In this document: positions 573 to 52,371 of the stretch, in pieces | How the letters are laid out: every line of letters begins with the position of its first letter | How positions within the stretch are numbered: position 1 is the stretch's first letter | IMG/VR virus record: IMGVR_UViG_3300050014_000823 | Span: 1 to 64,000 of that record | Strand: one strand, 5' to 3' | Length of the DNA stretch: 64,000 bases | Made by a program: the position numbers and the translations under genes | Notes under the pieces: model-generated | Database searches by the model: none | The model's input: only the letters and a program-made list of their open reading frames with translations | What the model was told of the DNA's origin: nothing

Positions 573-602
573 TGTAACATTTTTTGAGCATTTACGTATA
601 AT
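573..602 (+). promoter_or_regulatory. ECF-type promoter TGTAAC-N16-CGTATAAT
   Basis: match to motif repeated about 27 times; ATG at 608. Confidence 0.75.
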
Positions 603-1452: not shown

Positions 1453-1473
1453 CAAAAATAATTGATAATTTGC

Positions 1474-8103: not shown

Positions 8104-8156
8104 GTTTTCTGTAACATTCTCCTATAATTTTCGTATAATTGCGAAAAGATTTTATT

Positions 8157-30030: not shown

Positions 30031-30035
30031 TAGTG

Positions 30036-30100: not shown

Positions 30101-30622
30101 TTAGATAACTACGTAAGTAGTTTTGCGGAATTTCAGCCTCTTAACGTTGTCGATACTTATTTCCCTGTGGTAAATTGCTGTTTCAGTACCCTGATATTTT
30201 GCGGGGTCACTTGCAGGAAAATACTGTTTAATGACTGCTGAAGGAATGAAGTTTAACGCACTGTCAAAATGTAACGCTCTGAAGGTCTGCTGTGCCTTGT
30301 AGGTAAGGTAAAACGTTCCTTTGGTTACATGTGTACTCAAGGCAGTTGAGAGGCGTTTTCCTGCACCTTTCCATAATGGCTGACTGACAAATTCACGTTC
30401 TTTATTTTCACGTTCTAACTGATTGTTAACGCTATTTTCGTAAACATATCCAACCATACCGCCAACGTTTGCAATTTTGGTAACGTTGCCAAATTTTGCT
30501 TTGCCCTCTGCTGTCAGTTTAGGTTCTGTTACATACTGTAAGCTAACAGGCTGTGCGCCAAAATTCCAATTTCTTAACATTTCGATTAATTCTGCTTTGG
30601 TGATGTTTTTCTGATTTTTCAT
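30101..30622 (-). CDS. hypothetical protein
   Basis: 173 aa; minus-strand TGAAAC-N17-CGTATAA promoter at 30671-30700. Confidence 0.75.
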   Translation of the reverse strand: MKNQKNITKAELIEMLRNWNFGAQPVSLQYVTEPKLTAEGKAKFGNVTKIANVGGMVGYVYENSVNNQLERENKEREFVSQPLWKGAGKRLSTALSTHVTKGTFYLTYKAQQTFRALHFDSALNFIPSAVIKQYFPASDPAKYQGTETAIYHREISIDNVKRLKFRKTTYVVI

Positions 30623-30928
30623 GTCTTAATTTTTTTGGTTTATACTATGTCTGTTTGTGTCGTCTGATTCTTATACGTTGAAAAGTTACAAAATGTTTCA
30701 TTTTTTTCATTTATTTTTCATTTATTTTCACTTTTATTCACAACCTGGCACCAGGTGGGCGTTTGCGGTGATGGCATTCGTACATTGTTTTCCTTATATA
30801 TATAGGTGTGCTGATAGCTTGTTTAGAATCTGTCTAAATTGAGGGTAAAGTGTAACATTTTTTTTTATATCTCGTTAAAGGTAGTATATTTGACAACTGA
30901 ATTGAATGTTTAACTAATACATAAAGCT

Positions 30929-31495
30929 ATGAATGAAGTAACCAACAGAGCAACAGAATTAGAATTTAATGCAATTTATAAAGAGTTCAAACCGGCAATA
31001 GTTGCGCATTTGCGGACAAAAATCAAAAACGAGGAAGAGCGTGATGATATTGAAATGAGAGTATGGGGCAAACTTAATGAAAACCTACATACACACAATA
31101 TTGCCAAAGGTAAACTTAACACGTGGTTATTCACAATCGTAAAAAACGAAATCATTGATTACTTTCGTAGTGACAGGTATAAGAAACACGAAGCAATGAC
31201 AACCAAAGTGTCTGCAATGGTCAACGAAGAGGGTGTTGAGGCGTTTCAGTTTATCGGTGACAATACGGCAAGTACTGAAATCGAAAACAATCAGTTATCC
31301 GATAAAATACTCAACGCATTTGAAAAAATCAAACCTACCTACAAAGATATAGCAATACAGTATTTTCTTTATGAGAAGCAATACACTGAAATTGCGGATG
31401 CAATGTCCATACCATTAGGCACTGTAAAAGTGGCAATCATGAGAGCAAGAGAAGTACTGCAAAACAATCTTAAAGTCGAGTACGCAAGTTTATAA
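30929..31495 (+). CDS. ECF (group 4) RNA polymerase sigma factor
   Basis: region 2 TWLFTIVKNEIIDYFR and region 4 YTEIADAMSIPLGTVKVAIMRAREVL. Confidence 0.92.
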   Translation: MNEVTNRATELEFNAIYKEFKPAIVAHLRTKIKNEEERDDIEMRVWGKLNENLHTHNIAKGKLNTWLFTIVKNEIIDYFRSDRYKKHEAMTTKVSAMVNEEGVEAFQFIGDNTASTEIENNQLSDKILNAFEKIKPTYKDIAIQYFLYEKQYTEIADAMSIPLGTVKVAIMRAREVLQNNLKVEYASL

Positions 31496-31599
31496 TGTAC
31501 TCAAAAGCACTTAGGGCAATGTACAAAAATATATTGTCCTAAGTGTAACAAAAACCAGGAATTTACGTATAATCAATAGTAACCAAAACATATAAAGCT

Positions 31600-31854
31600 A
31601 TGGCAAAAGAAAAAATTACCCCACGTCCGCTTCCGGAAATCACTGCTGAAATCAGAAAAGATTGGAAACCAATGTACAGACCTGCACAGGCACACTTCGA
31701 AGCATTCGAGTATGCAGATAATGTCAACCAAATGTACGGCATGGACTCTGTAAAGAGTGAGATATTGTACTTTCTTGGCAATGCTCAGACTTGGAAAGGT
31801 GACGTTGCAAGACGCATAAAACTCGAACTCAAAGCACTCGTTGGCTTAAAGTAA
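31600..31854 (+). CDS. small conserved phage protein
   Basis: RPL.EI..EIRKDW...YFLGNAQTWKG..ARRIK.ELK; own promoter and terminator. Confidence 0.75.
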   Translation: MAKEKITPRPLPEITAEIRKDWKPMYRPAQAHFEAFEYADNVNQMYGMDSVKSEILYFLGNAQTWKGDVARRIKLELKALVGLK

Positions 31855-31956
31855 AACTAATGTTCATTGTACAAAAAGAGGGAATTATTTCCCTCTTTTT
31901 TGTAACATTTTCAGCGAATGTACGTATAATATAGAGTAACCAAAACAGAATGTACC

Positions 31957-32175
31957 ATGTCACACAGAAGTGCAGAATATCAAGCCGAAAGGTTAAGACG
32001 TACAACAGTACGCAAGGAGAGGCGCAAATCTGCAAGGCAAACCAAATATTGGCGGTATGGCAGACAATCAGAGGGTACTTGCCCGGATTGTGGCGGTCAA
32101 ATGTCTTGGTGCAGTTGTTGCCAAGTATGGAGCAAAAGTTGTTGTGTTGAATATGGTACTTGTCAATGTTCATAA
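31957..32175 (+). CDS. small basic Cys-rich protein
   Basis: CPDCGGQMSWCSCCQVWSKSCCVEYGTCQCS. Confidence 0.7.
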   Translation: MSHRSAEYQAERLRRTTVRKERRKSARQTKYWRYGRQSEGTCPDCGGQMSWCSCCQVWSKSCCVEYGTCQCS

Positions 32176-32181
32176 ATAAAC

Positions 32182-32238
32182 TGGGTGTTAGCGCAGTGGT
32201 AGAGCGAAATGTCGGGGGTTCGATTCCCTCACACCCTA
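32182..32238 (+). ncRNA. tRNA-like RNA lacking the anticodon arm
   Basis: GGGTGT/ACACCC acceptor, D arm GCGC-AGTGGTA-GAGC, only GAAATGTC before T arm GGGGG-TTCGATT-CCCTC. Confidence 0.75.
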
Positions 32239-32314
32239 CAAATATATTGTACAATAAGTGAAACATTTCTGTTGATTGTACGTATAATACTATGTAACCA
32301 AAACATATAAAGCT

Positions 32315-32656
32315 ATGGCAATGAAAATTTTCACACAGGTAATTATCAATGCTTTTAAAAAGCAGGGTAAGACAGGCAACAAATCAATGAAGGATATTTT
32401 TATCATCTGCAAACTGTTTAACCCCGGCGGTGCAGGTACATGGTATTTGTACGAACAGGAAGACGAGGACACGTTTTGGGCATTCGTGAACTTAGGTGAC
32501 GTTGTAATGTCCGAGTGTGGCACTGTATCAATGTCCGAGTTAATGTCTTACAGAGGTCCGTTTGGCTTAAAGATTGAACGTGACAAGTTTTTTGAGCCGT
32601 TCTCCATGACCTTAGAGGAAGTTTACAACAAGGTAAAAGCAGGACAGCACGTCTAA
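32315..32656 (+). CDS. DUF2958-like protein
   Basis: KLFNPGGAGTWYL.E...ECGTVSMSEL..RGPFGLKIERDKFF. Confidence 0.8.
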   Translation: MAMKIFTQVIINAFKKQGKTGNKSMKDIFIICKLFNPGGAGTWYLYEQEDEDTFWAFVNLGDVVMSECGTVSMSELMSYRGPFGLKIERDKFFEPFSMTLEEVYNKVKAGQHV

Positions 32657-32738
32657 AAATAAGTTGAAAATATGTCCCTCAGAGTGTAACATTTACGGGG
32701 TTTTTCGTATAATCACCTGTAACCAAAACACACAGACT

Positions 32739-33257
32739 ATGAATACTTATTTCACAAACGAATGTTTATCAATCTCCTTAGAGAGGCATAAAGATAATAC
32801 CTTAAGTCTTGAAATCGGTTCAGACTTTGGCAACCAAAGATATCACAAACAGCAACTACATGTATGTGAAAAACGTCTTGCAAGTGCTGTTGAAGGATTT
32901 TGGAAATCAACAAAAACCAAAAAACTTCAAGGTGTTCATGTTGGCTTCGGTGAAATCGACCATTATGACGACATGACTGACATATATCATACACCAACCG
33001 CCTTCATTAAAAGAGGCAAGAGAAAAGTAGAAACAAGTTGGAGAGAACACGGCAGTATACCAAAGGATTGGAGCATTAACCTACATGCGGCAATTGCTGA
33101 CACAACCACAATTAATCCCGTGCTTGAAGTCGTTAAGAATGCCATTGGCTTTTCTAAGTTCAAAGCAATTGAGAAGGAACTCATTAAAAAATTCCGTCCT
33201 GTATTGCAGAAGAAAAAAGAATATGGTAATTATTACAGTGAAAATTATGTAGACTAA
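32739..33257 (+). CDS. hypothetical protein
   Basis: ATG after promoter 32685 and TAACCAA leader. Confidence 0.7.
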   Translation: MNTYFTNECLSISLERHKDNTLSLEIGSDFGNQRYHKQQLHVCEKRLASAVEGFWKSTKTKKLQGVHVGFGEIDHYDDMTDIYHTPTAFIKRGKRKVETSWREHGSIPKDWSINLHAAIADTTTINPVLEVVKNAIGFSKFKAIEKELIKKFRPVLQKKKEYGNYYSENYVD

Positions 33258-33311
33258 CTGAAACATTTCCTCTGCAAATACGTATAATCAACTGTAACCA
33301 AACCAAAGACA

Positions 33312-33944
33312 ATGAAAAAATTAAGGATATTATTAGCATGTGAAGAAAGCCAAGCAGTAACAATAGCTTTCAGAAAACTTGGACATGAGGCTTACAGTTG
33401 TGACTTACTTGAATGTACAGGTGGTCACCCCGAATGGCACATACAAGGTGATGTAACTGTTGTACTTAAGCAACATTGGGACTTAATAATAGCATTCCCG
33501 CCATGCACACACTTAGCAGTAAGTGGCAACGCACACCGTGCTAAGAAACAGGCAGACGGACGTGAGGCAGAAGCAATAGCATTCTTTATGATGTTTGCCA
33601 ACCACGAATGTACGCACATAGCAATTGAGAACCCCGTAGGTATAATGTCCACTAAGTGGAGAAAGCCTAATCAGATTGTACAGCCGTGGCAGTTTGGACA
33701 ACCCGAAAGTAAGAAGACATGCTTATGGTTGAAAGGGTTACCAACATTGACTCACACCAATGTACTACCAAAACCCGCATGCGGATATTGGGACAACCAA
33801 ACATCTGATGGACAGAACAAACTCTTGGTTGACGGCAAATGGATAGCTTACAATGACCCACGGACACCCGCCTTAAGGTCAAAAACATATAAGGGAATTG
33901 CACAGGCAATGGCAAAGCAGTGGTCAGACTACCTAACAAAATAA
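33312..33944 (+). CDS. short phage-type DNA cytosine methyltransferase
   Basis: LLACEES, IAFPPCTHL, IENPVG, QPWQFG..ESKKTCLWL, RSKTY.GIA.AMA.QW. Confidence 0.78.
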   Translation: MKKLRILLACEESQAVTIAFRKLGHEAYSCDLLECTGGHPEWHIQGDVTVVLKQHWDLIIAFPPCTHLAVSGNAHRAKKQADGREAEAIAFFMMFANHECTHIAIENPVGIMSTKWRKPNQIVQPWQFGQPESKKTCLWLKGLPTLTHTNVLPKPACGYWDNQTSDGQNKLLVDGKWIAYNDPRTPALRSKTYKGIAQAMAKQWSDYLTK

Positions 33945-34144
33945 TTTGTCTTGTTTTGGTTTATACTCAGAAAGATGGGTGAACCGTTTAATCAGAACGG
34001 CACCCATTTTTTATTTTATGCATATGATGCAAAAATCCTGGCATTTCTGTAACATTTTTCTCAGTTTTTCGTATAATCATTCATAAGACACACACAGACT
34101 AACAGTCTTAAACCAAACAGAGTATAAACTTAAAACCAAACAAA

Positions 34145-35002
34145 ATGAAGACAAAAACATTATCACTTAGCAGAACAGATTTTCCAGTTGTTAGTTCACT
34201 TGACAACCTTGAAGTTGGAAGAATTTACACAACATTCAAACCGGAAATTATTAAGTCCCTGGAATTTAACAGAGGCGCAAAAGACGGATTTCTTCCTGAA
34301 AGAGTTGCAGCTTTACAGGCAAAGTTTGATACAGGTTTATTTTATATGAACGTCTGTCATGTTCTTGTCAACAGTAAAGGAAAAGCAATTGACGGAAACA
34401 ACAGAAAGAAAATGCTTTCAAACAACAAACAGGGTGTCAATTTTATGATTACAGCACAGCCGGAATTTAATCTTGACAATGAATCTGAAATTCTCAACAA
34501 CGTATCTGAATACAATTCGGTGAACTCAGCATGGAACGGCAAAGATGCTTATGAATCAGCACTCGCATTCAATGAAGCTGCCGCAGTCGCAATCGACAAA
34601 CTAAAAACCTGGGTTGAAAACACCTACGGCATTAATGCAGACATTTTCACACCGAGCAGACTTATTGCAATCGTTACCAAATTCAAACAGGGACTGAACG
34701 GTAAAGTACAGCCAAGACGTGCATATTGTAACAAAGAAACTGCAAGTGTACTCGAATCACCGGAATTTAAAGAACACCTATTGTTCTTAGTGAATGTTAT
34801 ACAGTTTGTACAGTCAAACAACAATTCAATAACAGCTTTTGATGTGGTTCGTTGCTTACTTCCTATAATGTGGAAGAAAGAGTTAAGTCAGAAAGTTGTT
34901 CTCGCAAACGTTAAAAAACGTGGTTTCAAAGGTATGGACAATACCAAAATGGCAGGTGTTAAGGCAAGAGTTACCGAGATACTGAAAATAGGAAATGTCT
35001 AA
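34145..35002 (+). CDS. ParB-N-like domain protein
   Basis: EFNRG...VLVNSKGKAIDGNNR. Confidence 0.5.
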   Translation: MKTKTLSLSRTDFPVVSSLDNLEVGRIYTTFKPEIIKSLEFNRGAKDGFLPERVAALQAKFDTGLFYMNVCHVLVNSKGKAIDGNNRKKMLSNNKQGVNFMITAQPEFNLDNESEILNNVSEYNSVNSAWNGKDAYESALAFNEAAAVAIDKLKTWVENTYGINADIFTPSRLIAIVTKFKQGLNGKVQPRRAYCNKETASVLESPEFKEHLLFLVNVIQFVQSNNNSITAFDVVRCLLPIMWKKELSQKVVLANVKKRGFKGMDNTKMAGVKARVTEILKIGNV

Positions 35003-35064
35003 TGTACAGATAGTTGTGGGTGGCATTGTCCACCCACTATTTATTAACCTTAAAACCACAGACA

Positions 35065-35547
35065 ATGAATACAGAAATACTTATTGAAAGATACAGACGA
35101 AGTAATGAGCATGAGCATATAGTAATGTCCGCAACAATCAGAACATTAATGCCAACAATTTTTGACCAAAACAATACTGAAACCATTGTTCAGCAGAGAA
35201 TAAAAAGAACCAAAGGTCCAACACTTTTCCTTGATGCATCAAATGGAAATCTTACTGCAACAGGTCAGCATTATCGTAAAACTGAAATGAGAGTTGGAAA
35301 TATCTTTGTTGAAGTAAAACATCAAAACACTGTCAGCAACATACAGGAATCTGTTATGGGTGAAATTGCAAGAGCAGAAAACATTAAAGGTCAATACTGG
35401 CTTGTTCTTCTTGGTGATGCATATAGAAGACCTATAATAATTTCTGAATTTGTAAGGATGATTTTCAAATACAAATTACAAAATAAGGTGAGAATGTTTT
35501 TAAGTGTTGAGGAATATATTCTTGCATTACAGGACGAAAATTTGTAA
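35065..35547 (+). CDS. possible PD-(D/E)XK nuclease-fold protein
   Basis: IFVEVKHQNT..WLVLLGDAY. Confidence 0.4.
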   Translation: MNTEILIERYRRSNEHEHIVMSATIRTLMPTIFDQNNTETIVQQRIKRTKGPTLFLDASNGNLTATGQHYRKTEMRVGNIFVEVKHQNTVSNIQESVMGEIARAENIKGQYWLVLLGDAYRRPIIISEFVRMIFKYKLQNKVRMFLSVEEYILALQDENL

Positions 35548-35597
35548 CATTTTCCGGGCAAATACGTATAATCATCAGTAACCAACACAGACATAAA

Positions 35598-37068
35598 ATG
35601 AAATCAGAAATTACAGTACGGTCACAGGGAATAAAAGGCGGTGATGCCAAATTCGAAGATAAAGGTTCAGCTACACTCTATCTCACAGACAGAGGACAGA
35701 AAAGAACTGACTTGGTAATTGACGTTGATTCATTCCGGGGTTCCGGGACGACATATAAAAGACGGGAAAAGACTTTAATAAATATTGACTTTGAGAACAC
35801 GCCTATATTTCATGGCACGGTTGAAGAACTTGTTGCAAGGCTGAAAAAACCCGCAACTGAATTCAAACAGACAGTTGAATTCAAATCACGTGGATTAGTT
35901 CTTGGTAATCTTTTCATGGGTGGTGAAGGTGCATATAAAGCAAAGACACTGAAAGCCAATAGTAAAAAAGAACTGATTGAAAAAGCTGTTGATATGTTGC
36001 TCGATGGCAGTCTTGATGGTGGCATGGGTTTTGACGGTTTACTTGGAGCAATGCTTGAGATAACAACTGTTACTACGTTCATTGTCAATGACAAATGTTT
36101 TCGTAATGAAGAAACTGAAAGCGTATATATTGGCGACTTAACAGCCGAACAGATGCAATTTCTTGAAGAAACAGGAATGTATGTGTAACATTCTCCCGGC
36201 AAATACGTATAATCTATTGAACCAAAACGACAAAACAATGAAGACATTTTCAATACAATTCGAAGAATTAAAGGAGCAGGCAATTGATAAAATCCGGGAC
36301 TTAATAAAGTCCAAAGGTAAAGAATCGAAACACAGCAACAAAAGATGTTTGAAAGTCACAAAGGATGACCTACAATTTAATCTTGGCGGTGGAAGATATC
36401 TCACTGAGATAAATGCAGAAACCCTGGTTGACAATGATGGATATGAATACAATTTTTATGTCCTAAGTACAGAAGACTTTTTATCAGTAACCGATTATCT
36501 GATAGCACAATATAAATAATATAGTTTGGTTACTATGCTTTTGTTTGGTTACAAAAGAAAACCCCGTGAAATTTGAAACATTTCCGGGGTTTTTACGTAT
36601 AATCATTTGTAACCAATACTTATAAAGCTATGGCAAAGAAGAAACTTTATTACACAGTCGAAAAAGAGATTGACGACAATGGTGGTGATGATACCCTCAC
36701 AGGTAACAAGACCATCACAGTTTACGAAATCGTAAACAACGAACCTAAAAAACTCACAGACATTGAGTGCGGAACAGAAGAGAACAGCAAAGATAAAATC
36801 AATGAGTATCTTGAAGACAATGGTTATGGTGATGATGAATTTACACTAATACTTCTGTAATATGAGTAAAGCAACCTTTGTAAAAGAAATAACAGTTGAA
36901 GACCTTAATGGTAATCCTGTTGAAATGGAAGTCTATCAGCATGAGAACGGTGGTTTATTCGCAATAGACAGTTCATTCGTTGACCAAGTACTTGGTGATG
37001 AATTTGACAGAGTAGTAATTCCCGACCCATTTAATGAAGGCTTCATGCTGGAATTAGAAGAAAATTAA
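35598..37068 (+). other. four small early-type CDS (35598-36188, 36238-36519, 36630-36860, 36862-37068), the last two very acidic
   Basis: cassettes preceded by ECF-type promoters. Confidence 0.7.
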
Positions 37069-37146
37069 CGACTGAACCCTGTAACACAGGGTTTTTTGTT
37101 GTAAATTAGAATCATATTCACTAATTTTGTATATTAATTTAAATAT

Positions 37147-37467
37147 ATGCAAACGAAAGAGAATAAAAAACAATGGAAGATTAATAATCCTGGAAAGGTA
37201 AAATTATATAATAAGAAGTCTGGATTAAAAAGATTCTATGGTATTACTGTAGAAGAATATGATTTACTGTTTAATAAACAGGAAGGTAAATGTTTAATAT
37301 GTGATAAGCATCAAAGTGAATTTAAGCGTGCATTTGATGTTGACCATAATCATAAGACAGGAATAATCAGAGGATTATTATGTGGTGGTTGCAACCTTCT
37401 TATTGGCAATGCTAAAGAAGATGTTAATATATTGGCACAAGCAATTAATTATTTAAATAATAATTAA
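37147..37467 (+). mobile_element. endonuclease VII-like homing endonuclease
   Basis: YGIT.EEY..L..KQ.G.C.IC...VDHNH.TG.IRGLLC..CN. Confidence 0.88.
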
Positions 37468-37523
37468 GTTGTAACATTTACAGGGTTTTTTCGTATAATC
37501 ACTATAACCAATACATAAAAGAC

Positions 37524-38263
37524 ATGGCAACATTTAAAGTAGTACACGAAATCGAAGTCGAAGCTAAGAACCCATTAGAAGCTGCAAAGACAGTACAGGA
37601 ATGGTTTGATGATGCTGACACCAAGTGGCAGTTCTACGTACAGAAAGAAGGTCAGAAGAAAATAGTCAGTGTAGACCTTAATGAAGACGATAGCGCAGCA
37701 GTTCTTCCTGTTGGTGCATATGAACCTATGATTCAACCCCTAATACAACTATAAGATGAACGGAAAAAAGAGAATCAATAAGGAAGCTACAGTACGGAAT
37801 ATCCGGAAAGCTGCAGAAGGCAACATAAGAGACATGGATGCCTTTGAAAAACAAATGGAGAACGAACAGGATATCCTGGATGCCTGCATCTTATGGGAAG
37901 CCGAAGTCGTATACCTGTAAAAATAAATCGAAAATAATTGCCCGGAAGTGTAACATTTTCGGGCAGTTTTCGTATAATCATATATAAGAAAGGGGTTCGT
38001 GCCACGCCAGCACGCAGAGGGTAGACTCCAACCTACCTTATACTCTGAGTTTAGACTCATTCTAAATAAGACCAAAGTGTAACAAAAACCCAGGTTTTTC
38101 GTATAATACCTGTAACCAACAATTAAAGCTATGATTATACTCGAAGGTAAGAACCCAGATTTTTTTGCAGTATGGTCGTGTGACACACAGTGCTACACAG
38201 TCTATTACAAGAATCAAGTACTGATAAAAAAAGACAGATTTGCTGACATTAAATCTTATCTGA
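37524..38263 (+). other. small CDS 37524-37754, about 37757-37920 and 38131-38263
   Basis: ORFs following promoters 37470 and 38078. Confidence 0.55.
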
Positions 38264-38322
38264 ATTGAAACATTTTCAAGTTTTTTTCGTATAATCTATT
38301 GTAAACCAAAACACACACAGAC

Positions 38323-39147
38323 ATGATGAAATTTACAACTATTGCAGATGCACGCAAACAGACAGGATTAAGTTACCTTGGTGGTATTGCCACAAGTGCA
38401 AAGATAAGCCACAGTAAACAATACAGTCATCAGTATACATATGGTATGTATCTTGCACCCGCTAAATTAAGTGGTCACAACGTTTGTAGCCACAGTACAC
38501 CCGAATGCCGTATGGGTTGTCTCAATACTTCGGGACGTGCAGGAATTGAGGAATTTTCGGGTATCACAAAGATAGCTGATTGCCGTATTAAGAAAACACA
38601 GTTGTTTTTTGACGAAACAGCATTTTTTATGCAGTGGCTGATTGCCGAAATTAAACAGGCACAGGCAAAAGCAGTCAGAGACAACTATTTCTTCTCTGTA
38701 AGGCTGAATGCAACATCAGACATTAATTGGGCAAACGTCTTGGTTGACGGTCAGAACATTTTTCAGATATTTCCACAGGTAAGTTTTTATGACTATACCA
38801 AAAATCATTTGAAGTTTGAAAACAAACCTTTGAACTATCACCTTACCTATTCTTACACAGGTCGCAATTGGGACAAGTGCATTGAATTACTTTCACGTGG
38901 TTTCAATATTGCAATGGTATTCAATGTAAAACACGAAAGTATGTCACCTGCAATGTACAAAGGTTATGCAGTGGTCAACGGTGACCTTACCGATTACCGC
39001 ATTGATGATGCCAAAGGTATTATAATAGGTTTGAAGTGGAAACGCATTGCAAACCGTATCAATGAGAAGAAAATTCTCAACAGTTGCTTCGTTGTCAATG
39101 TACAGTCTACAGTACCTAATGTACAACAACTGCAGTTAGTTGCATAA
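38323..39147 (+). CDS. gene product 88 (GP88)-like protein
   Basis: NVC..ST..C..GCL..SGR, VRLNATSDI.W, FYDYTK, NYHLTYS, GD.TD.R..D. Confidence 0.75.
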   Translation: MMKFTTIADARKQTGLSYLGGIATSAKISHSKQYSHQYTYGMYLAPAKLSGHNVCSHSTPECRMGCLNTSGRAGIEEFSGITKIADCRIKKTQLFFDETAFFMQWLIAEIKQAQAKAVRDNYFFSVRLNATSDINWANVLVDGQNIFQIFPQVSFYDYTKNHLKFENKPLNYHLTYSYTGRNWDKCIELLSRGFNIAMVFNVKHESMSPAMYKGYAVVNGDLTDYRIDDAKGIIIGLKWKRIANRINEKKILNSCFVVNVQSTVPNVQQLQLVA

Positions 39148-39201
39148 TTAATGCATATAATGCGGGGAATAAATGTTTAATCACTTCAAATAATGCGGTG
39201 A

Positions 39202-39609
39202 TTAAACATTCAATTCTAAATAAGAAATTGCTGATTTTAATGTTTCAATATTGTCATTACAATTACCTAAAAGAATATTACAATTTGGACAGAGTAAACC
39301 TCTAACACTTCCAGTAACATGATTATGGTCAATAAATATATGTCGTTTTCTTTCAAATTGTTTATTACATATTTTACATTTACCGTTCTGAGCATTGTAC
39401 ATATTAATAAAATCATCATGAGTTATATTATACTTACCATATTTTTTATTAAGTTTTTCACCAGGATTATTAGCGTATCTTATTCTATGACCAGCATTAC
39501 CACATTTTTTACAATAGTGGTCACGACCATATTTACCATTTATTCTTTTATGAAATTCATCAAGTGGTTTAGGAACTTTACATTTCGAGCAAATTTTCAA
39601 TTCTTCCAT
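39202..39609 (-). mobile_element. endonuclease VII-like homing endonuclease
   Basis: CSKC..CKKC N-terminus, QNGKCKIC...IDHNH.TG.VRGLLCPNCN; start after GTATTTAT at 39625-39632. Confidence 0.88.
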
Positions 39610-39712
39610 AATGTACAATTTAATATAAATACAAAGATAAAATGTTTTCTCCGCATTTTGTAACATTCTCCGCATATTTACATATAATCACTATAAACCA
39701 ATACTTAAGACA

Positions 39713-41855
39713 ATGACAATCCAGGAATTTTTAGCAGACAATACAATCACAGATGAAAACATAATAATGGATGCATTATGCATACCAAAGTCAGCCAGAG
39801 GCGTATTCAAAGTACGACCATTGTACCCTATCGGTGTAGGTCAATGGAAGACAGATAAAATGCCGCCTCAGTGGTCAAACAATGACCAATTCACAATGGG
39901 AACAGTTTACCCTATCTATGACAATGAAGGTATCTTTGTAATAGGTAAAGACGGACAGGGTAAAAAGTTCAATGAGAACGACTGGAAAGAAGTAGTTTGG
40001 TTCTAAAGTAATACTTAAGATAATGACAGCTAAAAAACAGATAACCAAGAAGTTAAAGCCAACCAAATTATGGGTTGGTCACATACCTGGAATCTATGGT
40101 TACGGTGTTATGGTCGTTGAATTTTCAGAAGACCAAGCCAGGAAATCTTTGAAACGTGCATTTGCACAGGCAAAGAAATACAATGACGGTCAAATGAGTT
40201 TTGCCAATGCCTTCGACCATTGGGGTGGCAGAATATTCGAAATCGAAACAGGTAGATATTATGGTGATGATTTCAGTGAATAATTGAAACCTTATTTGAG
40301 TTTGTACGTATAATACCTATAACCAATACACACACTAAATATGAAGAAATTATTAATCACACTCATTGTACAGGACGGTGAAAACCAACACAAACACAGA
40401 ATCCTGCACACCACTAACGGAAATGATATACACTTCGCAGCTCAGAGATATGCTGCAGGATTCTACGGTGATGATGAACCTGAACACCTGTTATCATGGT
40501 GGCAATTCCAGGCAGGTAGCATAGCAGTTGAAGTTGAGAATGTACGTGAACTCTCCGACTATGAGTATCAGCTATTGTCCGACCTCTTTGGTGGCATTGT
40601 ACGCAAACCATACTTTGAGATTGTACAGGCAGGTTTCAATGAAGGTCTTCAGAGAGAAGAAGTACAGATTCATTGTGGCGAAAATGGTAACTTGATGATT
40701 GCCAAAACTCCAGAAGGCTTCGTTGTTGACATATACAATCAGGATGAGAATATTGATTCTCTGACAGTCTGGGAAGACGACCTGTCACCACTGGAGATTG
40801 AAATCGACCCTAATGTACACGGGACTAAAATAAAAGAATTTCTTGACACTCAGGGACAAAAACATTCAGCTATAACAGCAGAACTTGGCTTACACCCTGC
40901 ACACAACATGAGTGATGAGATATTGATGGATGACTATTTCTACCTTGAAGGTAAAAAAGAGTGGTATCCAAAGAACAGTTCAATGTACGGTGATACTGAA
41001 CAGGCAATTGCAAACTTCTTGCAGGAAAATCGTGACGACTACTAAAAATAAACTTGCCGGGACTGAAATAATTCCCGGCATTTTTCGTATAATCATCATT
41101 AACCAACACACACTGAAATGAAAACAAATTGGAGCACACCTAAAACAAATATATTCGCAGGAATGTCAGACCTTCGTAAATGCCTTGCAGGTGGTAATAA
41201 AGCCAGACTTATAAGAGCACGCAATGAAGACTGTGAATTTCCAATAATGATTAAGAATGTGAATTCTGATTTCAGAAGCTATACCTTTAGTATTGGCTAT
41301 GCCAGCAGTATAAATAAAGTAAAGGCAGACCCAAATTTAAGTGAATTCGAAAAGCACCTTACATTGAACTATGTCTCTGTCTTCGGCAGTCAGGAAGCAA
41401 AGGACAGATATTATGAGACAGGCATATGTACTGTAGACAACTTTAAGAACATGGGTTGTAGTCATCTGGTACATGTCGATGACATGATTAAATTCCTGGA
41501 AGACACTAATGACCCAAGGGCAGCTTTATATAAAAGACAATACCGTGCCAATGAACAGGTAAATGATGTACAACACTTCTTTGACTTCTACAGATGTGAC
41601 AAAGGCAGTCCTCACACTATTAAGAAGTTCAAGAGAAAACTCTGGGTTGTTGATATGCTGGATAAAGATATGCCAGCACCCAGAACACCAATTCTTGTGT
41701 ATATCCTAAATGTACTGGCTTATCCCCTTAAGTACATACCCAACAAGTCAGTACTACGTATGCCAGAATATAAATGCGTAACATTCAGAATTGGTGCAGT
41801 GACAAATGGCTTCGCAGTAGAGTTTCATCTCCCAAAGAAATTCAGTTTTAAATAA
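39713..41855 (+). other. four early-type hypothetical CDS (39713-40006, 40023-40283, 40341-41045 acidic, 41118-41855)
   Basis: preceded by promoters 39659, 40285, 41064. Confidence 0.7.
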
Positions 41856-41985
41856 AGATATTCTATGGCGGTTCAATCCGCACTCATTTGGTTTAGTGTT
41901 TTGGTTAACATGTCCCCGGAAGTTGTGACTCCGCTGGCTAAAAAGAGAATCCCCTGTATTTATAGAATATGGGGGATTTTTCATT

Positions 41986-42351
41986 ATGCAAACAAGAGAA
42001 CAAAGATTAGTGTATAAGAAGCGATATAGAGACAAGAATAAAGAAAAGATTCATGAATACAATCGTAAAACCAGTGAGCATAGGAAAATCCAGGATAGAA
42101 CACGTGCATTAAAAAGTTTTGGTTTAACTGCCGAAGATTACGACATTCTTTTCAATAAACAAGAAGGTAAATGTGCCATTTGTGGTAAGCATCAAAGTGA
42201 ACTAAAACCTGCACTATGTATCGACCATAACCATCAAACAAATAAAGTCCGGGGATTACTCTGTGGTAAATGTAATCGTGGACTTGGATATCTTAATGAC
42301 AGCATTGATTTACTGCAGCTTGCAATAAATTATCTTAAAATAAATAATTAA
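41986..42351 (+). mobile_element. endonuclease VII-like homing endonuclease
   Basis: KQEGKCAICGKHQ..IDHNHQTNKVRGLLCGKCN; close paralog of 37147. Confidence 0.88.
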
Positions 42352-42385
42352 ATCTTGAAACCTTTTCCCAGATTGTACGTATAAT

Positions 42386-42875
42386 CATTTGTACGACTGA
42401 GGTCTGACCGAGTAGACCTTCGAGTGCCTTTCAGTCCGAACTTAGAATCATTCTAAACAAGCATGGTCATTGTCATGGACAGATTGTCCATGAGGAATGT
42501 CCACAGCCATTGTACGGAACAAACCTCTGCCATTGTACGGAATAGACTAAGGATTGTACAACATAATAAACTACAGATTGTACGGGTACAAGTACCCCCG
42601 AATGTCCGAATTATAAAAAACTATAAAAATCGTTTTGGCAAAAAAATATATTGGCTCGAAGTCGCACGTGTGGGGCATACAAAACCCCCACAATTCCCCA
42701 CTTTACCCCCTTTAGGATTAAGGTCTTATAGTTGTCAGTGTGTAAGTGCTTGATTATCAATGATAGCATTTTGATATCAACTTAGTACAAAACCATACAA
42801 ATACTGTAATTATAGTACAGTTAAAACGGCATTAGTTATATTGTTTGTACAACAGTGAAAATAACTATGATTTTC
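42386..42875. repeat. non-coding region with direct repeats and hairpins
   Basis: GCCATTGTACGGAA x2 (42506, 42529), further ATTGTAC, CATGGACA/TGTCCATG hairpin, C tracts. Confidence 0.7.
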
Positions 42876-42951
42876 TGTAACATTTCTCCCTGTATTACGT
42901 ATAATCACACACAGACAGCGTAAGTAGTACTAACCAATACACATAAGCAAT

Positions 42952-45339
42952 ATGAAAACCAACACAGGAACATTAAACTCACAGACAGTTGAAGGAACAA
43001 TCGGAACACGTCAGATGGGCATGGATGCCAACTCACAGGCGATTGTTTTTCAGATGTTTACAAAGAATATCTACAGTAATGCAATAGGTTCGGTTGTTAG
43101 GGAGATAACTTCGAATTGTTTTGATTCACACACAGAGGCAAAGATTAATCCTCTTGAATCACCTGTTATTATACGCAAGTCATTTGACCCTATTACTAAG
43201 AGTCATTATATAAGTTTCCATGACTTTGGTATGGGTATTTCACCAGACAGGATGGATAACGTTTACGGTGTATTCTTCAAGAGTACAAAGGCAGGTGACA
43301 ATGAGCAGATTGGTGGCTTCGGAATAGGTGGTAAAACACCTTTAGCATACAAACGCAGTACTGGTTTTGGCGAAGGCGAATATGACAATTCATTCTCAAT
43401 CATCACAAACTTTGATGGCATACGTTATGAGTATATAGTTTTCGAAGGCAAGAAAGGTCCAGAATACACTGACCCGATAATGTCTGAAACGACTGAACAC
43501 AATGGCACAGAGATAAAGATTCCTGTACTTGAAAAAGACATTACAAAGTTCAAGTCAGAAATGGTAAAGCAATTGTACTACTTTGAGAATGTTATCTTTG
43601 AGGGTTTTGTTAATGACCCGGAATATCCGACAGCAACAGAGAATTTGCTTACCAATGCTTATCAGATTGTCAAAGGCAAGACTTTCTTCTACAGAGGCAA
43701 TGATTACTCACAGTACACACATGTTTGTCTTGGCAGGGTAGCTTATCCGATTAATTTTGGATTACTTGGCTTAGATGGTTCAGATTACCGTTTCCCTGTA
43801 GCAATTAAACTGGAAATCGGTGAGATTGGAGTTACAGCCAGTCGTGAGACACTTGACTATAGTGAACAAACAATCAAGGTGTTAAAGGTTAAACTTGAAG
43901 CAGTTAAAGCAGAGATAACTGCAATGTTAAGTAAGCAGTATGAAAACATTGTGACCTTAGAGGATTACTTCAAAGTCAAAAATCAGTTCGGAGTATTGTA
44001 CATGCCGAATGGTGGTAGCTTTAAGGTTGGTGAGATTATCAAACAGAAAGACGTTGACTTCTCGAATTTCAAATATGGCTTCATGAAGATGCCGAATGAC
44101 AAACAACTCTTTAACTATTTCTTCGAAACCAAATTGTATGGTAAGAAGATTAAGAAAAGTAAGAAGAACAACTATGAGTATGATGATGAGGGCAACAGGA
44201 TTGAGGAAGGCGAATTGGTTGGTGGTTATGATACGATTATCAACAAGCATAATGTACTGTATCATTTCGAAGGTGAATTTCAGCGCAAACTTGTTAAACA
44301 GGCATGGTTAAAGAATCAGTGTACGACTTTCTACACAGTTACAACCAAGAATATTGTCAACAGATTTGAGACACGCAGAATGTCAGACCTGTTCAATGTA
44401 GACGATAAAGTTGTTGAGAGAGGTCTTGACGGTCAGCCAACACTTGATGCAAACGGTCAGCAGATTCCTACAGTGTTCATGAAAGGTTTACTTGAATTAC
44501 AACAGGAGTACTTTGAAATCATCAGCAAGTATTGTACAGCCTATGATGCTGTTGTTGTCCCGGAAGACTTCAAAGAGAGTCGTAAGAATGGTGCAAGGCG
44601 TTTGTCACAGGAGTACAAGAACATGACAATACCTGTTAAGATATTCGGTGGCTACAGAGGCACATTCAGAGTTAAACTTGACAGTCTTTTCAAACTTCAC
44701 ATTCCTATCTTTTACGGAACAAAGGAGAATGATTATCAGTTGAGACAGGCAAAAGAAATGTTCGGCATATTGTTCGAAAGCAGTAGCATCATTGGCAAGT
44801 ACAACGAAAGAACACATGAGTTCAGATTTGACAATGGCAAGAAAGGCATAATGTTCTTACAGATATCACAGGGTAATGTACGTTACATGGAGTACTGTCA
44901 ACAGGCATACCATATCAACGAATTCAAAACGAAAATGCTGAAACGTAAGGAGAATGCAGTGATGGAATACTTTCAGTCACAGAATTTCGTACACAAATTT
45001 GATACTGTCAATAGCTTTTACAAATCAAAAGCATTTGGTAAGGTTGCTCCGGAATGGCAGAAGAAGACCGATAAGATTAATGCTTTCATAAAGAAACAGT
45101 ATGTTGGTTATAACAATAACTGGGACAGGTACAGGTCAGAATTAAGTCGTTACTTTGACATCAACGGCATTGAAATGACAAAGGAACAACAGAAGTTCGA
45201 AGCTATCATCGAAGAATTCTCAGAACTTGAAGAAATGAATTCAGAGACAATGAGATACTTAGATGTCCCAAGTTATGACCTTGATGATGAGAAGCACACA
45301 GCATTTTGGGCAATAGTTAAGAAAGTTTTAGTGTACTAA
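42952..45339 (+). CDS. rIIA: rIIA-like protein with GHKL/Hsp90-type ATPase N-terminus
   Basis: IYSN....VREITSNCFDSH, DFGMGIS, STK....QIGGFGIGGK, NGTEI.IP, ASRE.L.Y. Confidence 0.8.
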   Translation: MKTNTGTLNSQTVEGTIGTRQMGMDANSQAIVFQMFTKNIYSNAIGSVVREITSNCFDSHTEAKINPLESPVIIRKSFDPITKSHYISFHDFGMGISPDRMDNVYGVFFKSTKAGDNEQIGGFGIGGKTPLAYKRSTGFGEGEYDNSFSIITNFDGIRYEYIVFEGKKGPEYTDPIMSETTEHNGTEIKIPVLEKDITKFKSEMVKQLYYFENVIFEGFVNDPEYPTATENLLTNAYQIVKGKTFFYRGNDYSQYTHVCLGRVAYPINFGLLGLDGSDYRFPVAIKLEIGEIGVTASRETLDYSEQTIKVLKVKLEAVKAEITAMLSKQYENIVTLEDYFKVKNQFGVLYMPNGGSFKVGEIIKQKDVDFSNFKYGFMKMPNDKQLFNYFFETKLYGKKIKKSKKNNYEYDDEGNRIEEGELVGGYDTIINKHNVLYHFEGEFQRKLVKQAWLKNQCTTFYTVTTKNIVNRFETRRMSDLFNVDDKVVERGLDGQPTLDANGQQIPTVFMKGLLELQQEYFEIISKYCTAYDAVVVPEDFKESRKNGARRLSQEYKNMTIPVKIFGGYRGTFRVKLDSLFKLHIPIFYGTKENDYQLRQAKEMFGILFESSSIIGKYNERTHEFRFDNGKKGIMFLQISQGNVRYMEYCQQAYHINEFKTKMLKRKENAVMEYFQSQNFVHKFDTVNSFYKSKAFGKVAPEWQKKTDKINAFIKKQYVGYNNNWDRYRSELSRYFDINGIEMTKEQQKFEAIIEEFSELEEMNSETMRYLDVPSYDLDDEKHTAFWAIVKKVLVY

Positions 45340-45629
45340 ATATCAAATGTCCCCTGTAAATATTGCAGGGGACATTAAAATTTACCTACAATGAATGAGT
45401 TAAAAACATACCTTCATAAACACTTTAGGTCACTACGCCAAAATAGCTTGTGATGAAGCACTTAGGTTAGAGAGAGAAGGCAAGAAAATGTCATGGTTGA
45501 AGTACAGGAAGATGAAGGCAATAGTAAGATTATACTTGCATGTAAATATTTGGTTTTAACTGTAACATTCCTGGCAGCTTTACGTATAATCACACAGACA
45601 ATTAAATTACTAACTTAATACTAATAATA

Positions 45630-47407
45630 ATGAAAAGAGCAATAATTTTCTTAGTTGTATTTACACTATTCGTAGCATTTCTTGGTTACAGTGTTTTTGA
45701 TTCACGAAGAAAGGCAACAAATGAACTTGCTCTTAAGTACGTCAACTATAATGACATCAATGGTGATATGATATTTACTGATGATGCAGGTGGCAGAGTT
45801 GTACTTACCTTTGAAGAACAGAGGAATGTCATTGATATCTTCGATAAAGCCGATGAAATTACAGAGATTTATATAAAAGAAAAGATTGAGAATTATATTG
45901 AGCGTGAATTGTTTACTTACAATGACAAGGTTTACAAGTATTATTATGTGTTTGACAATAAGCATGTCAAATCATACATATCAATTACTACCAATCAAGT
46001 TAAGGCTAATATGGAACGTCTTGGCGTTGATACAAAGCATTCGTTATTGGCGTATGATGCGTTTGACAGAACCGTTATGGTAAGCAGAATAACTAAGTTC
46101 ACTGATTATTTCAGCAGATACAAATTAGACCATTTGAGGCGCAGAAGTAAGACAGAGATAGCAAATCAGAAAGTCGAGAAAATACTTGAAAATAAACCAG
46201 TAAAACTGTAACATTCCCGGAAACTTTTCGTATAATCACACATGGCAAGCAAAAGAAAAAGAAGTACTGATTACAGAAGGGAATTGAAAGACCTTCAAGC
46301 ACAGGAGAAAGCACTGAGGGCACGCATAATTAAACATGCGGAAGAACTTTGTCAGAAATATCCGGGTGTGCGCATCGGTGAATTCTGTGTTATTGACTAC
46401 ATAAGATTTGTTGAAGACAATAACCTTACAGAAGCATTTATGGTAATGGAAGCCATTGAGAAAGACCTGGAAGCAAAGCATCCGCATAAGCAGACAGCAT
46501 TTGAATTTCCGACAGTTGTTCCTGCACCGCCAGTAGGTGAAAGATTTATCATCAGTGATGGTGTGGCTTATACAAGAAAATCGGAAGAAGAGGCTATGAA
46601 GTGTTCTAAAAGTCCCGATGGTAAACATCAGTTCGGGTTTGATGGTTCAACCTGTAGTTATTGTGGCGCAAATGTAGCATACCTTTAAAACTAAATATAT
46701 GAGAATTAAAATAAGTGAAATAGACCTGTTGACATTCAACAATTTAAAGGGTAAAATGCTCTTGAAGTCAGACACGCATAGATTATATGTCATCGCAGAC
46801 TTCAAAACAGAGGTTGTGGAAGAAACTGTGATGGAGAAACCTTCATTGTTCAAGAAAGCAGTACCTGTTCAGAAGAAACAATTGTACTTGACAGGTGTGA
46901 ATGTACACGCATGGCATTCAACAGGTAAATTCCTCGGTGACTTGACCGATGATTCAGCAGAATGGTTACTCCGGAGAGACCTGTACAGAATTCGACAGAA
47001 TTGGATTGACTTCTGTGACCAACTCAAAGCATTCGGCTTTAAAATAGCTGAAATCAATCCAGAAGCATAATTTTTAAACCTTAAAATCATATACTATGAA
47101 AGCTACAATTAAATTTATTGCATTGTTCACAGGATTTCTTTTTTCGCTGTTCCCTACAATGGCAGCATTTATATATCTGCTTTCCGGGAAGCAAGCATTC
47201 ATAGACTTTATTACAGGAATATCCTCAGAAAGATTTTGGCTGTTTGGTATACCATTGTTCATTGTAACCATGACAGCTTCTGTTTTAACTCTTATGGAAA
47301 TGATGTACTTCAAAAGTCCAGCTAAACAGGCAAAACCATTGTCCGTTGATGACCCAGACCTTGAGAAGAAAATTAAGAGATTAAATATGTTGGAAACCCA
47401 ATACTAA
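45630..47407 (+). other. four hypothetical CDS (45630-46211 and 47096-47407 membrane; 46242-46688; 46699-47070)
   Basis: ORFs after promoters 45561 and 46207. Confidence 0.65.
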
Positions 47408-51789: not shown

Positions 51790-51841
51790 ACAGTATTATA
51801 CGTAAAGATTGAAATAATGTTACAGTTTGGTGCATATAAAT

Positions 51842-52247: not shown

Positions 52248-52371
52248 GATTATACGTATTATACGTATAAGCCAGGAAAATGTTACAAAAAATACAGAAA
52301 AAATAAAGGGTGTCGTTCTGGTTAAACAATTCACCCTTTTTCTAACCTTAAAACTAATCTATGAAAAAAAC

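What the first reader, a model, noticed from the sequence alone, without database searches (positions are those of the whole stretch)
30671..46236. Phage-encoded ECF sigma factor sitting at the head of its putative regulon
Seen: about 27 copies of TG(T/A)AAC-N16-CGTATAAT with near-invariant spacer (one of 15, one of 17). Of these, 22 lie in 30.7-46.2 kb and 5 elsewhere (573, 8110, 51824, 52287, 59578). The sigma gene has a variant TGTAAC-N16-CGTT. Known: AAC at -35 and CGT at -10 with a 16-bp spacer is the classic ECF signature (Bacillus SigW TGAAAC-N16-CGTA). Inference: early transcription runs on an ECF sigma, either this one (autoregulated or packaged) or a host envelope-stress sigma triggered by infection. 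The phage pspC gene would fit the latter.
Basis: partly seen in the sequence, partly recalled or inferred. Interest (0 to 1): 0.8.

Follow-up and report, generated by a model that had tools for sequence, protein, structure and literature searches.

The report
Phage ECF sigma with its promoters
A 299-kb phage from peat, probably infecting Bacteroidota, carries its own SigW-like ECF sigma factor next to about 27 near-identical ECF-type promoters, and related phages keep the same pairing, so the phage most likely uses this sigma to turn host RNA polymerase onto its pre-late genes.

Summary
The window holds 22 exact copies of TGWAAC-N16-CGTATAAT (0 expected) and 5 variants, 27 in all. Twenty-two lie in 30.67-46.24 kb, and all point at the downstream gene.

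The gene at 30929-31495 is a true ECF sigma. Its closest solved relative is B. subtilis SigW, whose published consensus is essentially this motif, and the SigW residues that read G-35 and C-31 are conserved.

Sigma and promoter cluster travel together. At least seven other phage lineages, with sigma down to about 26-32% identity, have the same promoters directly beside the sigma gene. About 55 loci around other phage ECF sigmas have none.

In relatives the last T of 'TATAAT' is C or G, so these are not sigma-70 promoters. The genes lack Shine-Dalgarno sequences and show Bacteroidota-type start contexts.

The sigma gene is the exception in the cluster. Its CGT is degenerate, and a conserved host-type TAyATTTG box follows it. 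This suggests a cascade: host sigma-A makes the sigma, and the sigma fires the regulon and weakly itself.

No RNA data could be found and no binding was tested. A host ECF sigma as starter is not excluded. The pspC argument fails.

This is a new member of a known kind. Interest is moderate.

The parts
30929..31495 (+). ECF sigma factor gene (188 aa), SigW-like
   Evidence: Pfam r2 + r4_2. TIGR02937 scores 71.7 against a cutoff of 42.9. Best PDB hit is SigW 5WUQ. It is the only sigma-like ORF in the window.
30851..30880 (+). sigma gene's own ECF-like promoter, weak variant (-10 CGTTAAAG)
   Evidence: The -35 is invariant across 9 relatives but the CGT is not conserved.
30885..30892 (+). host-type sigma-A -7 box TATATTTG, 37 nt before the sigma ATG
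   Evidence: Invariant TAyATTTGAC in alignment A2. TTTG lies 19 nt upstream in 5 relatives. Also present in L119 and L010. Consensus from PMC6847099.
30101..30622 (-). divergent 173-aa gene, always next to the sigma; function unknown
   Evidence: Synteny. 91-94% identical where the sigma is 48-81% identical. More than 215 homologues. No known fold.
30670..30700 (-). promoter variant (N17, CGTATAAG) for the 173-aa gene
   Evidence: The same divergent promoter occurs in L116/L117.
573..602 (+). promoter for ORF 608-892 (leaderless), then small ORFs and tRNA-CUA
8110..8139 (+). promoter for the DNA-polymerase-like ORF ending at 9203
31544..31573 (+). promoter for ORF 31600-31854
31901..31930 (+). 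promoter for ORF 31957-32175 and the tRNA-like 32182-32238; a terminator hairpin abuts it
32259..32288 (+). promoter for the DUF2958 gene 32315-32656
32685..32713 (+). promoter with 15-nt spacer, for the ORF ending at 33257
33259..33288 (+). promoter for the DNA methyltransferase 33312-33944
34048..34077 (+). promoter for ORFs 34145-35002 and 35014-35547
35543..35572 (+). promoter for ORF 35598-36188
36184..36213 (+). promoter for the ORF ending at 36519
36574..36603 (+). promoter for 36630-36860 and 36862-37068; a hairpin spans its -35
37470..37499 (+). promoter for 37524-37754 and 37756-37920
37949..37978 (+). promoter for a ~95-nt non-coding unit (37984-38077); a hairpin spans its -35
   Evidence: The unit is conserved in L165 and L119.
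38078..38107 (+). promoter for small ORF 38131-38268
38266..38295 (+). promoter for the GP88-family gene 38323-39147
39659..39688 (+). variant promoter (CATATAAT) for 39713-40006
40285..40314 (+). promoter for ORF 40341-41045
41064..41093 (+). variant promoter (TGAAAT) for 41118-41855; overlaps a terminator-like hairpin
42356..42385 (+). promoter for a 77-nt leader and ORF 42463-42753
42876..42905 (+). promoter for rIIA 42952-45339
45561..45590 (+). promoter for ORF 45630-46211
46207..46236 (+). promoter for 46242-46688 (leaderless) and the genes that follow
51795..51824 (-). promoter for the helicase gene 51789..50194
52258..52287 (-). promoter with a doubled -10; no ORF of 40 aa or more within 150 nt
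59549..59578 (-). promoter for 59513..59259 and downstream genes

Best explanation
The phage encodes a SigW-like ECF sigma factor (30929-31495). It replaces the host sigma on host core RNA polymerase and directs it to phage promoters of the form TGWAACATTT-N12-CGTATAAT. There are 27 such promoters in the window and at least 35 on the contig. They drive many short, insulated transcription units. These units carry small unknown genes, a DNA methyltransferase, rIIA, a helicase, a polymerase-like gene, and at least one unit with no ORF (37984-38077). Together they look like the pre-late (early or middle) programme.

The sigma gene differs from the rest of the cluster. It keeps the -35 element but has a degenerate -10. 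Five bases downstream it carries a conserved Bacteroidota sigma-A type -7 box (TAyATTTG), with TTTG 19 nt upstream in relatives.

The likely order of events is as follows. Host sigma-A holoenzyme makes the first sigma mRNA. The new sigma then fires the regulon and, weakly, its own gene.

What is shown and what is inferred:
- Shown: the motif, its statistics and orientation; the family of the protein; conservation of the pairing between sigma and promoters across phages; conservation of the sigma-gene footprint.
- Inferred: that this sigma binds these sites; the transcription start about 6 nt after the octamer; the timing; the host phylum.

The confidence of 0.7 is for the main claim, that the phage sigma reads these promoters. 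The sigma-A kick-start step alone is about 0.5.
For: 1. The motif is real and directional.

2. The protein is an ECF sigma. A profile of the clade hits SigW 5WUQ at E 2.4e-30, against 4e-18 for the next hit, E. coli sigma-E.

3. The published SigW consensus is T-36 G A A A C x T T T plus a CGTA -10 (PMC6713349, PMC5758882), which is essentially this motif. SigW residues T168, K170 and R175 align with T165, K167 and R172 here. K170 and R175 read C-31 and G-35, and T168 contacts the A-34 phosphate. R172 is invariant in the clade, and T165 and K167 are nearly invariant. SigW T171, which reads A-34, is V168 here, and position -34 is T or A.

4. Clusters of the same promoter start right after sigma homologues in L116/L117/L165, L118/L009 and L119, and lie in the same locus as the sigma homologue in L027/L179, L080, L010 and L039. 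Around other phage ECF sigmas, about 55 loci of 12-20 kb each have none. In the tree, a core clade with 98/92 support is motif-positive throughout.

5. Details are lineage-specific. The window has N16 in 22 of 24 sites and T after CGTATAA in 23 of 24. L165 has C in 16 of 20. L119 has N17 in 16 of 16 and G in 13 of 16. This fits co-evolution with a phage factor and excludes a sigma-70 type T-7.

6. Translation signals fit Bacteroidota. None of 87 genes has a Shine-Dalgarno core, and A peaks at -13, -12, -6 and -3 (PMC6847099). Sigma-A in that phylum reads TTTG/TAnnTTTG, not TATAAT.

7. The sigma-gene footprint is conserved.

8. Seven sites of this phage and eight in relatives have the ATG exactly 5 nt after the octamer. 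This is expected if transcription starts there.
Against: There is no transcript or binding evidence; no RNA run was listed. The motif is almost unchanged across sigmas that are only 26-32% identical, which a conserved host factor would also explain. Several motif-rich contigs (L075, L091, L107, L001) showed no sigma in the fragments held, and the pattern-based scan did not find one on those contigs. That result is inconclusive, not negative. The host-type -7 box is present upstream of the sigma gene in only 5 of 10 lineages. L039 has the full consensus there, and L009, L080, L027 and L120 have ECF-like variants only. In those lineages something must supply the first sigma. TAnnTTTG is not enriched in the window overall (84 against 78 expected). 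No anti-sigma or RNA polymerase-binding partner was identified.
Confidence: 0.7

Rival explanations
1. A host ECF sigma, for example an envelope-stress sigma switched on by infection, reads these promoters. It acts either alone or as the starter that produces the first phage sigma from the sigma gene's weak ECF-type promoter.
For: ECF sigmas show overlapping promoter recognition, and a T-tract next to the -35, which these promoters have, widens the range of ECF sigmas that can use a promoter (PMC5758882). Flavobacteria have ECF promoters with a CGT box at -10 (PMC9723704). In half of the lineages the sigma gene has only an ECF-like promoter. The motif is nearly constant across very divergent phage sigmas.
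Against: The motif cluster is tied to one phage sigma clade and absent from about 55 other sigma-bearing phage loci. The position of the sigma at the head of the cluster is conserved. Spacer length and the base after CGTATAA shift with phage lineage. No close cellular homologue of the sigma was found. The best is 30% identical, and the genome scan returned only a 22% hit. The pspC-like ORF gives no support.
Confidence: 0.15
2. These are ordinary strong early promoters for the host housekeeping sigma. Read as GTAACA-N17-TATAAT they match 10 of 12 positions of the sigma-70 consensus.
For: The sigma-70 scan lists them at 10/12 with the optimal 17-nt spacer. Dense arrays of strong host-type promoters are typical of early regions in T4, T5 and SPO1 (own knowledge).
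Against: The T at the end of TATAAT is the most conserved -10 base for sigma-70, yet it is C or G in related lineages. The invariant CG lies at -14/-13, which is not an extended -10 TG. The invariant bases of the -35 are G..AAC, not TTG. The translation signals point to Bacteroidota, whose sigma-A reads TAnnTTTG (PMC6847099). The sigma gene itself uses a different box.
Confidence: 0.05
3. Another phage factor reads the sites. Candidates are a phage RNA polymerase encoded outside the window, or an activator that appropriates the host sigma as T4 MotA/AsiA does. In this case the ECF sigma serves another gene class.
For: Only 64 kb of the 299 kb were read in full. A second promoter-like class (GTATTTATA) exists, so more than one specificity factor is needed.
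Against: The sites are bipartite with a fixed 16-17 nt gap and the exact ECF signature. That is not the continuous pattern of single-subunit polymerase promoters. No polymerase or MotA/AsiA-like gene was seen among the scanned proteins of the window. The sigma is closest to SigW, whose consensus is this motif.
Confidence: 0.05

Closest known systems
Bacillus subtilis SigW (ECF sigma) and its promoters TGAAACnTTT-N16-CGTA
   Same: Two-domain ECF architecture. It is the best solved-structure match. The promoter consensus is almost identical, including the T-tract and CGTA (PMC6713349, PMC5758882). The base-contact residues for G-35 and C-31 are conserved.
   Different: It is not an orthologue: it scores 58.6 bits against the 209-bit equivalog cutoff. 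It has no RsiW-type anti-sigma neighbour. It is phage-encoded and probably works in Bacteroidota. Position -34 is mostly T. The -10 extends to CGTATAA(T).
phiEco32 gp36 (with gp79), the phage sigma for middle and late promoters
   Same: A small phage-encoded sigma redirects host core RNA polymerase to a conserved phage promoter class, after the host sigma has transcribed the first genes (PMC12276001).
   Different: No detectable sequence similarity: phiEco32 is not among the tblastn hits. gp36 promoters are defined by a single AATGTA element near -11, whereas these are full bipartite ECF promoters. The gene set here looks early rather than middle or late. No gp79-like partner was identified, although a very conserved unknown 173-aa neighbour exists.
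SPO1 gp28 and T4 gp55 temporal sigma cascades
   Same: The logic matches: an early product is a sigma that switches host polymerase to the next gene class (own knowledge).
   Different: Different sigma families and promoter types. Here the sigma gene appears to be the main host-dependent step and controls most of the small-gene cluster.
ECF sigmas annotated in crAss-like phages and Lak megaphages
   Same: They are the nearest phage homologues in GenBank (22-28% identity), also from phages of Bacteroidota.
   Different: They form other clades. None of the loci examined around such sigmas carries this motif.

Membership tests
ECF (group 4) sigma-70 family | Only the sigma-2 and sigma-4 domains, about 190 aa, with no region 1.1 or 3 | tested here: met
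   Pfam Sigma70_r2 covers residues 16-83 and r4_2 covers 125-175 of 188 aa. The protein aligns end to end with SigW.
ECF (group 4) sigma-70 family | Passes a curated family model | tested here: met
   TIGR02937 sigma70-ECF scores 71.7 bits against a cutoff of 42.9.
ECF (group 4) sigma-70 family | Target promoters have AAC at -35 and CGT at -10 with a rigid 16-17 nt spacer | tested here: met
   27 candidate sites, 22 of them with exactly 16 nt. Binding itself was not tested.
ECF (group 4) sigma-70 family | Co-transcribed anti-sigma factor (common, but not universal) | tested here: not met
   A terminator-like hairpin and a new promoter follow the gene. The neighbours have no Pfam anti-sigma domain.
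ECF (group 4) sigma-70 family | Autoregulatory promoter upstream of its own gene | tested here: inconclusive
   The -35 is conserved but the -10 is degenerate in most lineages. Only L039 has the full consensus.
SigW orthologues (NF007223 / TIGR02948) | Reaches the equivalog score | tested here: not met
   58.6 bits against 209, and 48 bits against 243.
Phage sigma factors that redirect host RNA polymerase (phiEco32 gp36, SPO1 gp28 type) | Phage-encoded sigma plus a conserved phage-specific promoter class | tested here: met
Phage sigma factors that redirect host RNA polymerase (phiEco32 gp36, SPO1 gp28 type) | Binds host core enzyme and initiates at those promoters during infection | not testable with these tools
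   No RNA run was listed and there is no biochemistry.
phiEco32 gp36 homologues | Sequence homology to gp36 | tested here: not met
   tblastn of the sigma against 50,697 phage records gave 33 hits, none from an Escherichia or Salmonella phage.
Sigma-70 housekeeping promoters | TTGACA-N17-TATAAT with conserved A-11 and T-7 | tested here: not met
   The window matches 10 of 12 positions, but the T-7 position is C or G in related lineages, and the conserved bases are G..AAC and CGT.
Bacteroidota sigma-A promoters (TTTG / TAnnTTTG) | A -7 box TAHHTTTG with TTTG about 19 nt upstream | tested here: met
   Met for the sigma gene only: TATATTTG at 30885-30892, invariant in 9 relatives, with TTTG at N19 in 5 of them. 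The 26 other sites lack it. Function was not tested.

The most novel reading that the evidence does not exclude
A widespread clade of environmental jumbo phages of Bacteroidota runs its whole pre-late programme from a single host-dependent gene, the ECF sigma. Its promoters are consensus-like and carry the T-tract, which makes them generic enough that host envelope-stress ECF sigmas can also fire them. The envelope damage caused by infection would then itself trigger or boost the phage programme. The extremely conserved 173-aa neighbour would be a polymerase-directed cofactor analogous to phiEco32 gp79.
Probability: 0.12. Interest if true: 0.75.

Novelty: new member of a known kind. Interest (0 to 1): 0.5.

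Why it matters
Reviews state that jumbo phages without their own RNA polymerase 'likely' use their sigma homologues on phage-specific promoters (PMC13282480, PMC7824862). Concrete pairs of sigma and promoter are known for very few phages, and in the library searched none was found for phages of Bacteroidota. Here the pair can be read directly from sequence, and it is conserved over a whole clade of uncultured phages.

This gives a testable model of temporal control in a phylum whose housekeeping promoters are unusual. It also offers a set of short, strong, insulated promoters with a small cognate sigma, which could serve as an orthogonal expression switch for Bacteroidota. In addition, it flags a very conserved unknown protein and several conserved non-coding elements next to the sigma gene.

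Tried and rejected
- **RNA evidence.** No RNA run was listed for 35500-38400. DNA runs are peat metagenomes only.
- **Nucleotide search.** The 15.7-kb region found nothing in GenBank phages.
- **Bacterial genomes.** The genome scan for close sigma relatives found only a 22% hit in an Anaerolineaceae MAG, so it gives no clue to the host.
- **Second IMG/VR scan.** A broader sigma alignment did not find sigmas on the motif-rich contigs of L001, L075, L091 and L107. The scan uses one peptide pattern, so this is inconclusive.
- **Host-type promoters elsewhere.** TAnnTTTG is not enriched in the window, so host-type promoters are not a general class here.
- **Rfam.** Nothing was found for the non-coding units after 37949 and 42356. 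Their folds are not better than shuffles.
- **The 173-aa neighbour.** It has no Pfam, PHROG, Atlas or PDB-fold match.
- **Sigma-54 reading.** A sigma-54 reading of the CCTGGCAC...TTGC block upstream of the sigma gene was rejected because the spacing is wrong.
- **pspC.** It was located at 14955-15182 and found unrelated to the cluster.
Full report
**What is there**

The motif TGWAAC-N16-CGTATAAT occurs 22 times exactly in the window, and shuffled sequence gives none. Relaxed scans add five variants:
- 32685, with a 15-nt spacer
- 30700..30670 on the minus strand, with a 17-nt spacer and CGTATAAG
- 39659, with CATATAAT
- 41064, with TGAAAT
- 30851, upstream of the sigma gene, with CGTTAAAG

This gives 27 sites, 22 of them between 30.67 and 46.24 kb.

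All sites point at the next gene. It reads TGWAACATTT, a variable stretch, T-rich bases, then (A/T)CGTATAAT. About 5 nt later many sites have an A/C-rich leader, GTAACCAAWAC.

The window is the first 64 kb of a 299,144-bp IMG/VR contig. At least eight more exact sites lie further along it. The DNA comes from peat metagenomes.

**The protein**

ORF 30929-31495 has Pfam sigma-70 regions 2 and 4_2 and nothing else. It passes the curated ECF superfamily model but no equivalog.

A profile of the clade hits B. subtilis SigW (5WUQ) at E 2.4e-30. The next best hit, E. coli sigma-E, is at 4e-18.

The published SigW -35 consensus is T-36 G-35 A-34 A-33 A-32 C-31 x T T T, and CGTA is the SigW-selective -10 (PMC6713349, PMC5758882). 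That is this motif, apart from T or A at -34 and a longer -10.

In the ungapped alignment of region 4, the SigW residues line up as follows:

| SigW residue | Contact | Residue here |
|---|---|---|
| R175 | reads G-35 | R172 |
| K170 | reads the G opposite C-31 | K167 |
| T168 | backbone at -34 | T165 |
| T171 | reads A-34 | V168 |

R172 is invariant in the clade, and T165 and K167 are nearly invariant. The T171-to-V168 change sits at the one -35 position where the phage motif differs from SigW.

This is the only sigma-like ORF in the window.

**Comparative evidence**

Sigma homologues of 87-46% identity occur on short metagenome contigs. More distant ones occur on large viral contigs.

Wherever the sigma belongs to this clade, the same promoter appears in clusters. 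In L116/L117/L165, L118/L009 and L119 the cluster starts directly downstream of the sigma gene. L027/L179, L080, L010 and L039 carry the sites in the same locus as their sigma gene. The gene order is kept where flanking genes were called: a divergent 173-aa gene, then the sigma, then a small ORF of 85-91 aa.

Around other phage ECF sigmas, about 55 loci of 12-20 kb each have no site. In a maximum-likelihood tree, the core clade (support 98/92) is motif-positive throughout. A 40-member clade of other phage sigmas is motif-negative throughout.

Fine details shift with lineage:

| Lineage | Spacer | Base after CGTATAA |
|---|---|---|
| window | N16 in 22/24 | T in 23/24 |
| L165 | mixed N16/N17 | C in 16/20 |
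| L119 | N17 in 16/16 | G in 13/16 |

So the apparent TATAAT is not a sigma-70 -10 element, because its T-7 is not conserved across the clade.

**Host and the rival 'housekeeping' reading**

A sigma-70 scan does score the sites 10/12, as GTAACA-N17-TATAAT. However, none of 87 genes has a Shine-Dalgarno core. Adenine peaks at -13, -12, -6 and -3, and these are the determinants described for Flavobacterium (PMC6847099).

The nearest GenBank homologues of the sigma are in crAss-like and Lak phages of Bacteroidota. A sub-threshold match to a Bacteroidetes sRNA family also occurs.

In that phylum sigma-A reads TTTG/TAnnTTTG (PMC6847099, PMC9723704), not TATAAT. Host housekeeping recognition is therefore unlikely.

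**The sigma gene's own promoter**

An alignment of the divergent intergenic region from nine relatives shows two invariant blocks: TGWAAC.TT and TAyATTTGAC. The CGT is not conserved; it appears as CGTT, AGTA or AGTT.

TAyATTTG fits the revised sigma-A -7 consensus TAHHTTTG. Five relatives have TTTG exactly 19 nt upstream, which to my knowledge is the optimal spacing. Two further lineages, L119 and L010, also carry a TAHHTTTG box before their sigma gene.

The box is not general in the window (84 occurrences against 78 expected), so its conservation at this one place is meaningful. My rough estimate for three independent lineages is about 4e-4.

Other lineages have only ECF-like variants there, and L039 has the full consensus. 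The start of the cascade therefore may not be the same everywhere. A contribution from a host ECF sigma remains possible.

**Indirect evidence for the start site**

Seven sites of this phage, and eight in relatives, have the ATG exactly 5 nt after the octamer. In this phage there are no values from 0-4 or 6-16. The rest cluster at 17-28 nt. A fixed 5-nt class is what leaderless mRNAs starting at the ATG would give.

Four sites have strong hairpins with T-runs that abut or span the -35, so the units look insulated from one another.

**Content of the regulon**

Most products have no family. Recognisable ones are DUF2958, a DNA methyltransferase, a GP88-family protein, rIIA, a helicase, a polymerase-like protein, and (in the unit starting at 41064) an endonuclease VII.

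This looks early or middle. No structural gene was seen behind a site, apart from one weak 'tail' hit outside the window.

A second promoter-like class, GTATTTATA, lies 4-39 nt before other genes, with 10 occurrences against 2.4 expected. It may be the late class.

**What is known already**

Phage sigmas that redirect host polymerase are classical. I recall SPO1 gp28 and T4 gp55 from my own knowledge, and phiEco32 gp36 is described in PMC12276001. Reviews already suggest the same for polymerase-less jumbo phages (PMC13282480, PMC7824862).

I found no description of this clade, this promoter, or any sigma-promoter pair for a Bacteroidota phage in the library searched. I therefore file it as a new member of a known kind. 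The mechanism is inferred, not shown.

**Limits**

There is no transcript data, no host genome, and only fragments of the other contigs. The association between sigma clade and motif is strong, but it is correlative.

Noticed in passing
window 1380-1453 (+): A tRNA with anticodon CUA (amber suppressor), in the unit that starts at promoter 573. It hints at stop-codon reassignment or suppression in part of the genome.
   Followed up: no
window 32182-32238 (+): A 57-nt tRNA-like sequence with acceptor, D and T arms but no anticodon arm. Rfam tRNA scores it 36.9 bits, and ARAGORN does not call it.
   Followed up: partly
window 30101-30622 (-): A 173-aa protein lies divergent from the sigma gene. 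It is 91-94% identical in lineages whose sigma is only 48-81% identical. It has more than 215 metagenomic homologues, some on 327-372 kb contigs. The AlphaFold model is confident (pLDDT 84), yet it has no PDB fold match and resembles only uncharacterised viral proteins.
   Followed up: yes
window 29960-30030: A very C-rich then G-rich element (runs of 5-8 C or G) sits in an AT-rich genome, 3' of the 173-aa gene. It is conserved in L165/L117, L118, L119, L172 and L175. No Rfam match.
   Followed up: partly
window 30035-30049, 30823-30837, 38051-38065, 42442-42456: A recurring box TTAGAAT..(A)TTCTAA occurs at these sites. The copy just upstream of the sigma promoter is conserved in L165, L119, L080 and L027. 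Two others end short non-coding units. It may be an operator or a terminator; its function is unexplained.
   Followed up: partly
window 37984-38077 (+); L165 from 20372; L119 from 14252: A non-coding unit of about 95 nt is driven by promoter 37949. Its 5' end (ATAAGAAAG) and a block GTAGACTCCAAC are conserved in two other lineages. No Rfam family matches, and the fold is not better than shuffles.
   Followed up: partly
window 5540, 7066, 12494(-), 12514, 20386(-), 28061, 41957, 60126(-): A second promoter-like motif, (G)TATTTATA (C at 7066), lies 4-39 nt before start codons (GTATTTATA 10 occurrences against 2.4 expected). It is a candidate late-promoter class, reminiscent of the T4 late TATAAATA.
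   Followed up: partly
window 52298-52371 (-): A sub-threshold Rfam match to the Bacteroidetes FopS sRNA family (36.6 bits, gathering score 56) lies just upstream of promoter 52287.
   Followed up: no
It has no ECF-type promoter and lies outside the cluster.
   Followed up: yes
L165 6796-8567: In the P0014 lineage, a resolvase plus IS605 OrfB/TnpB element is inserted upstream of the 173-aa gene.
   Followed up: no
L009, L080, L119 sigma genes: Several clade members carry an extra N-terminal segment of about 45 aa, with motifs like AWK.F and C.LR..W. The window's sigma lacks it.
   Followed up: no
window 37147-37467 and 41986-42351: There are two endonuclease VII genes. Neither has its own ECF-type promoter. 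The first has a possible host-type TAATTTTG box 18 nt upstream. The second has a GTATTTATA box.
   Followed up: no
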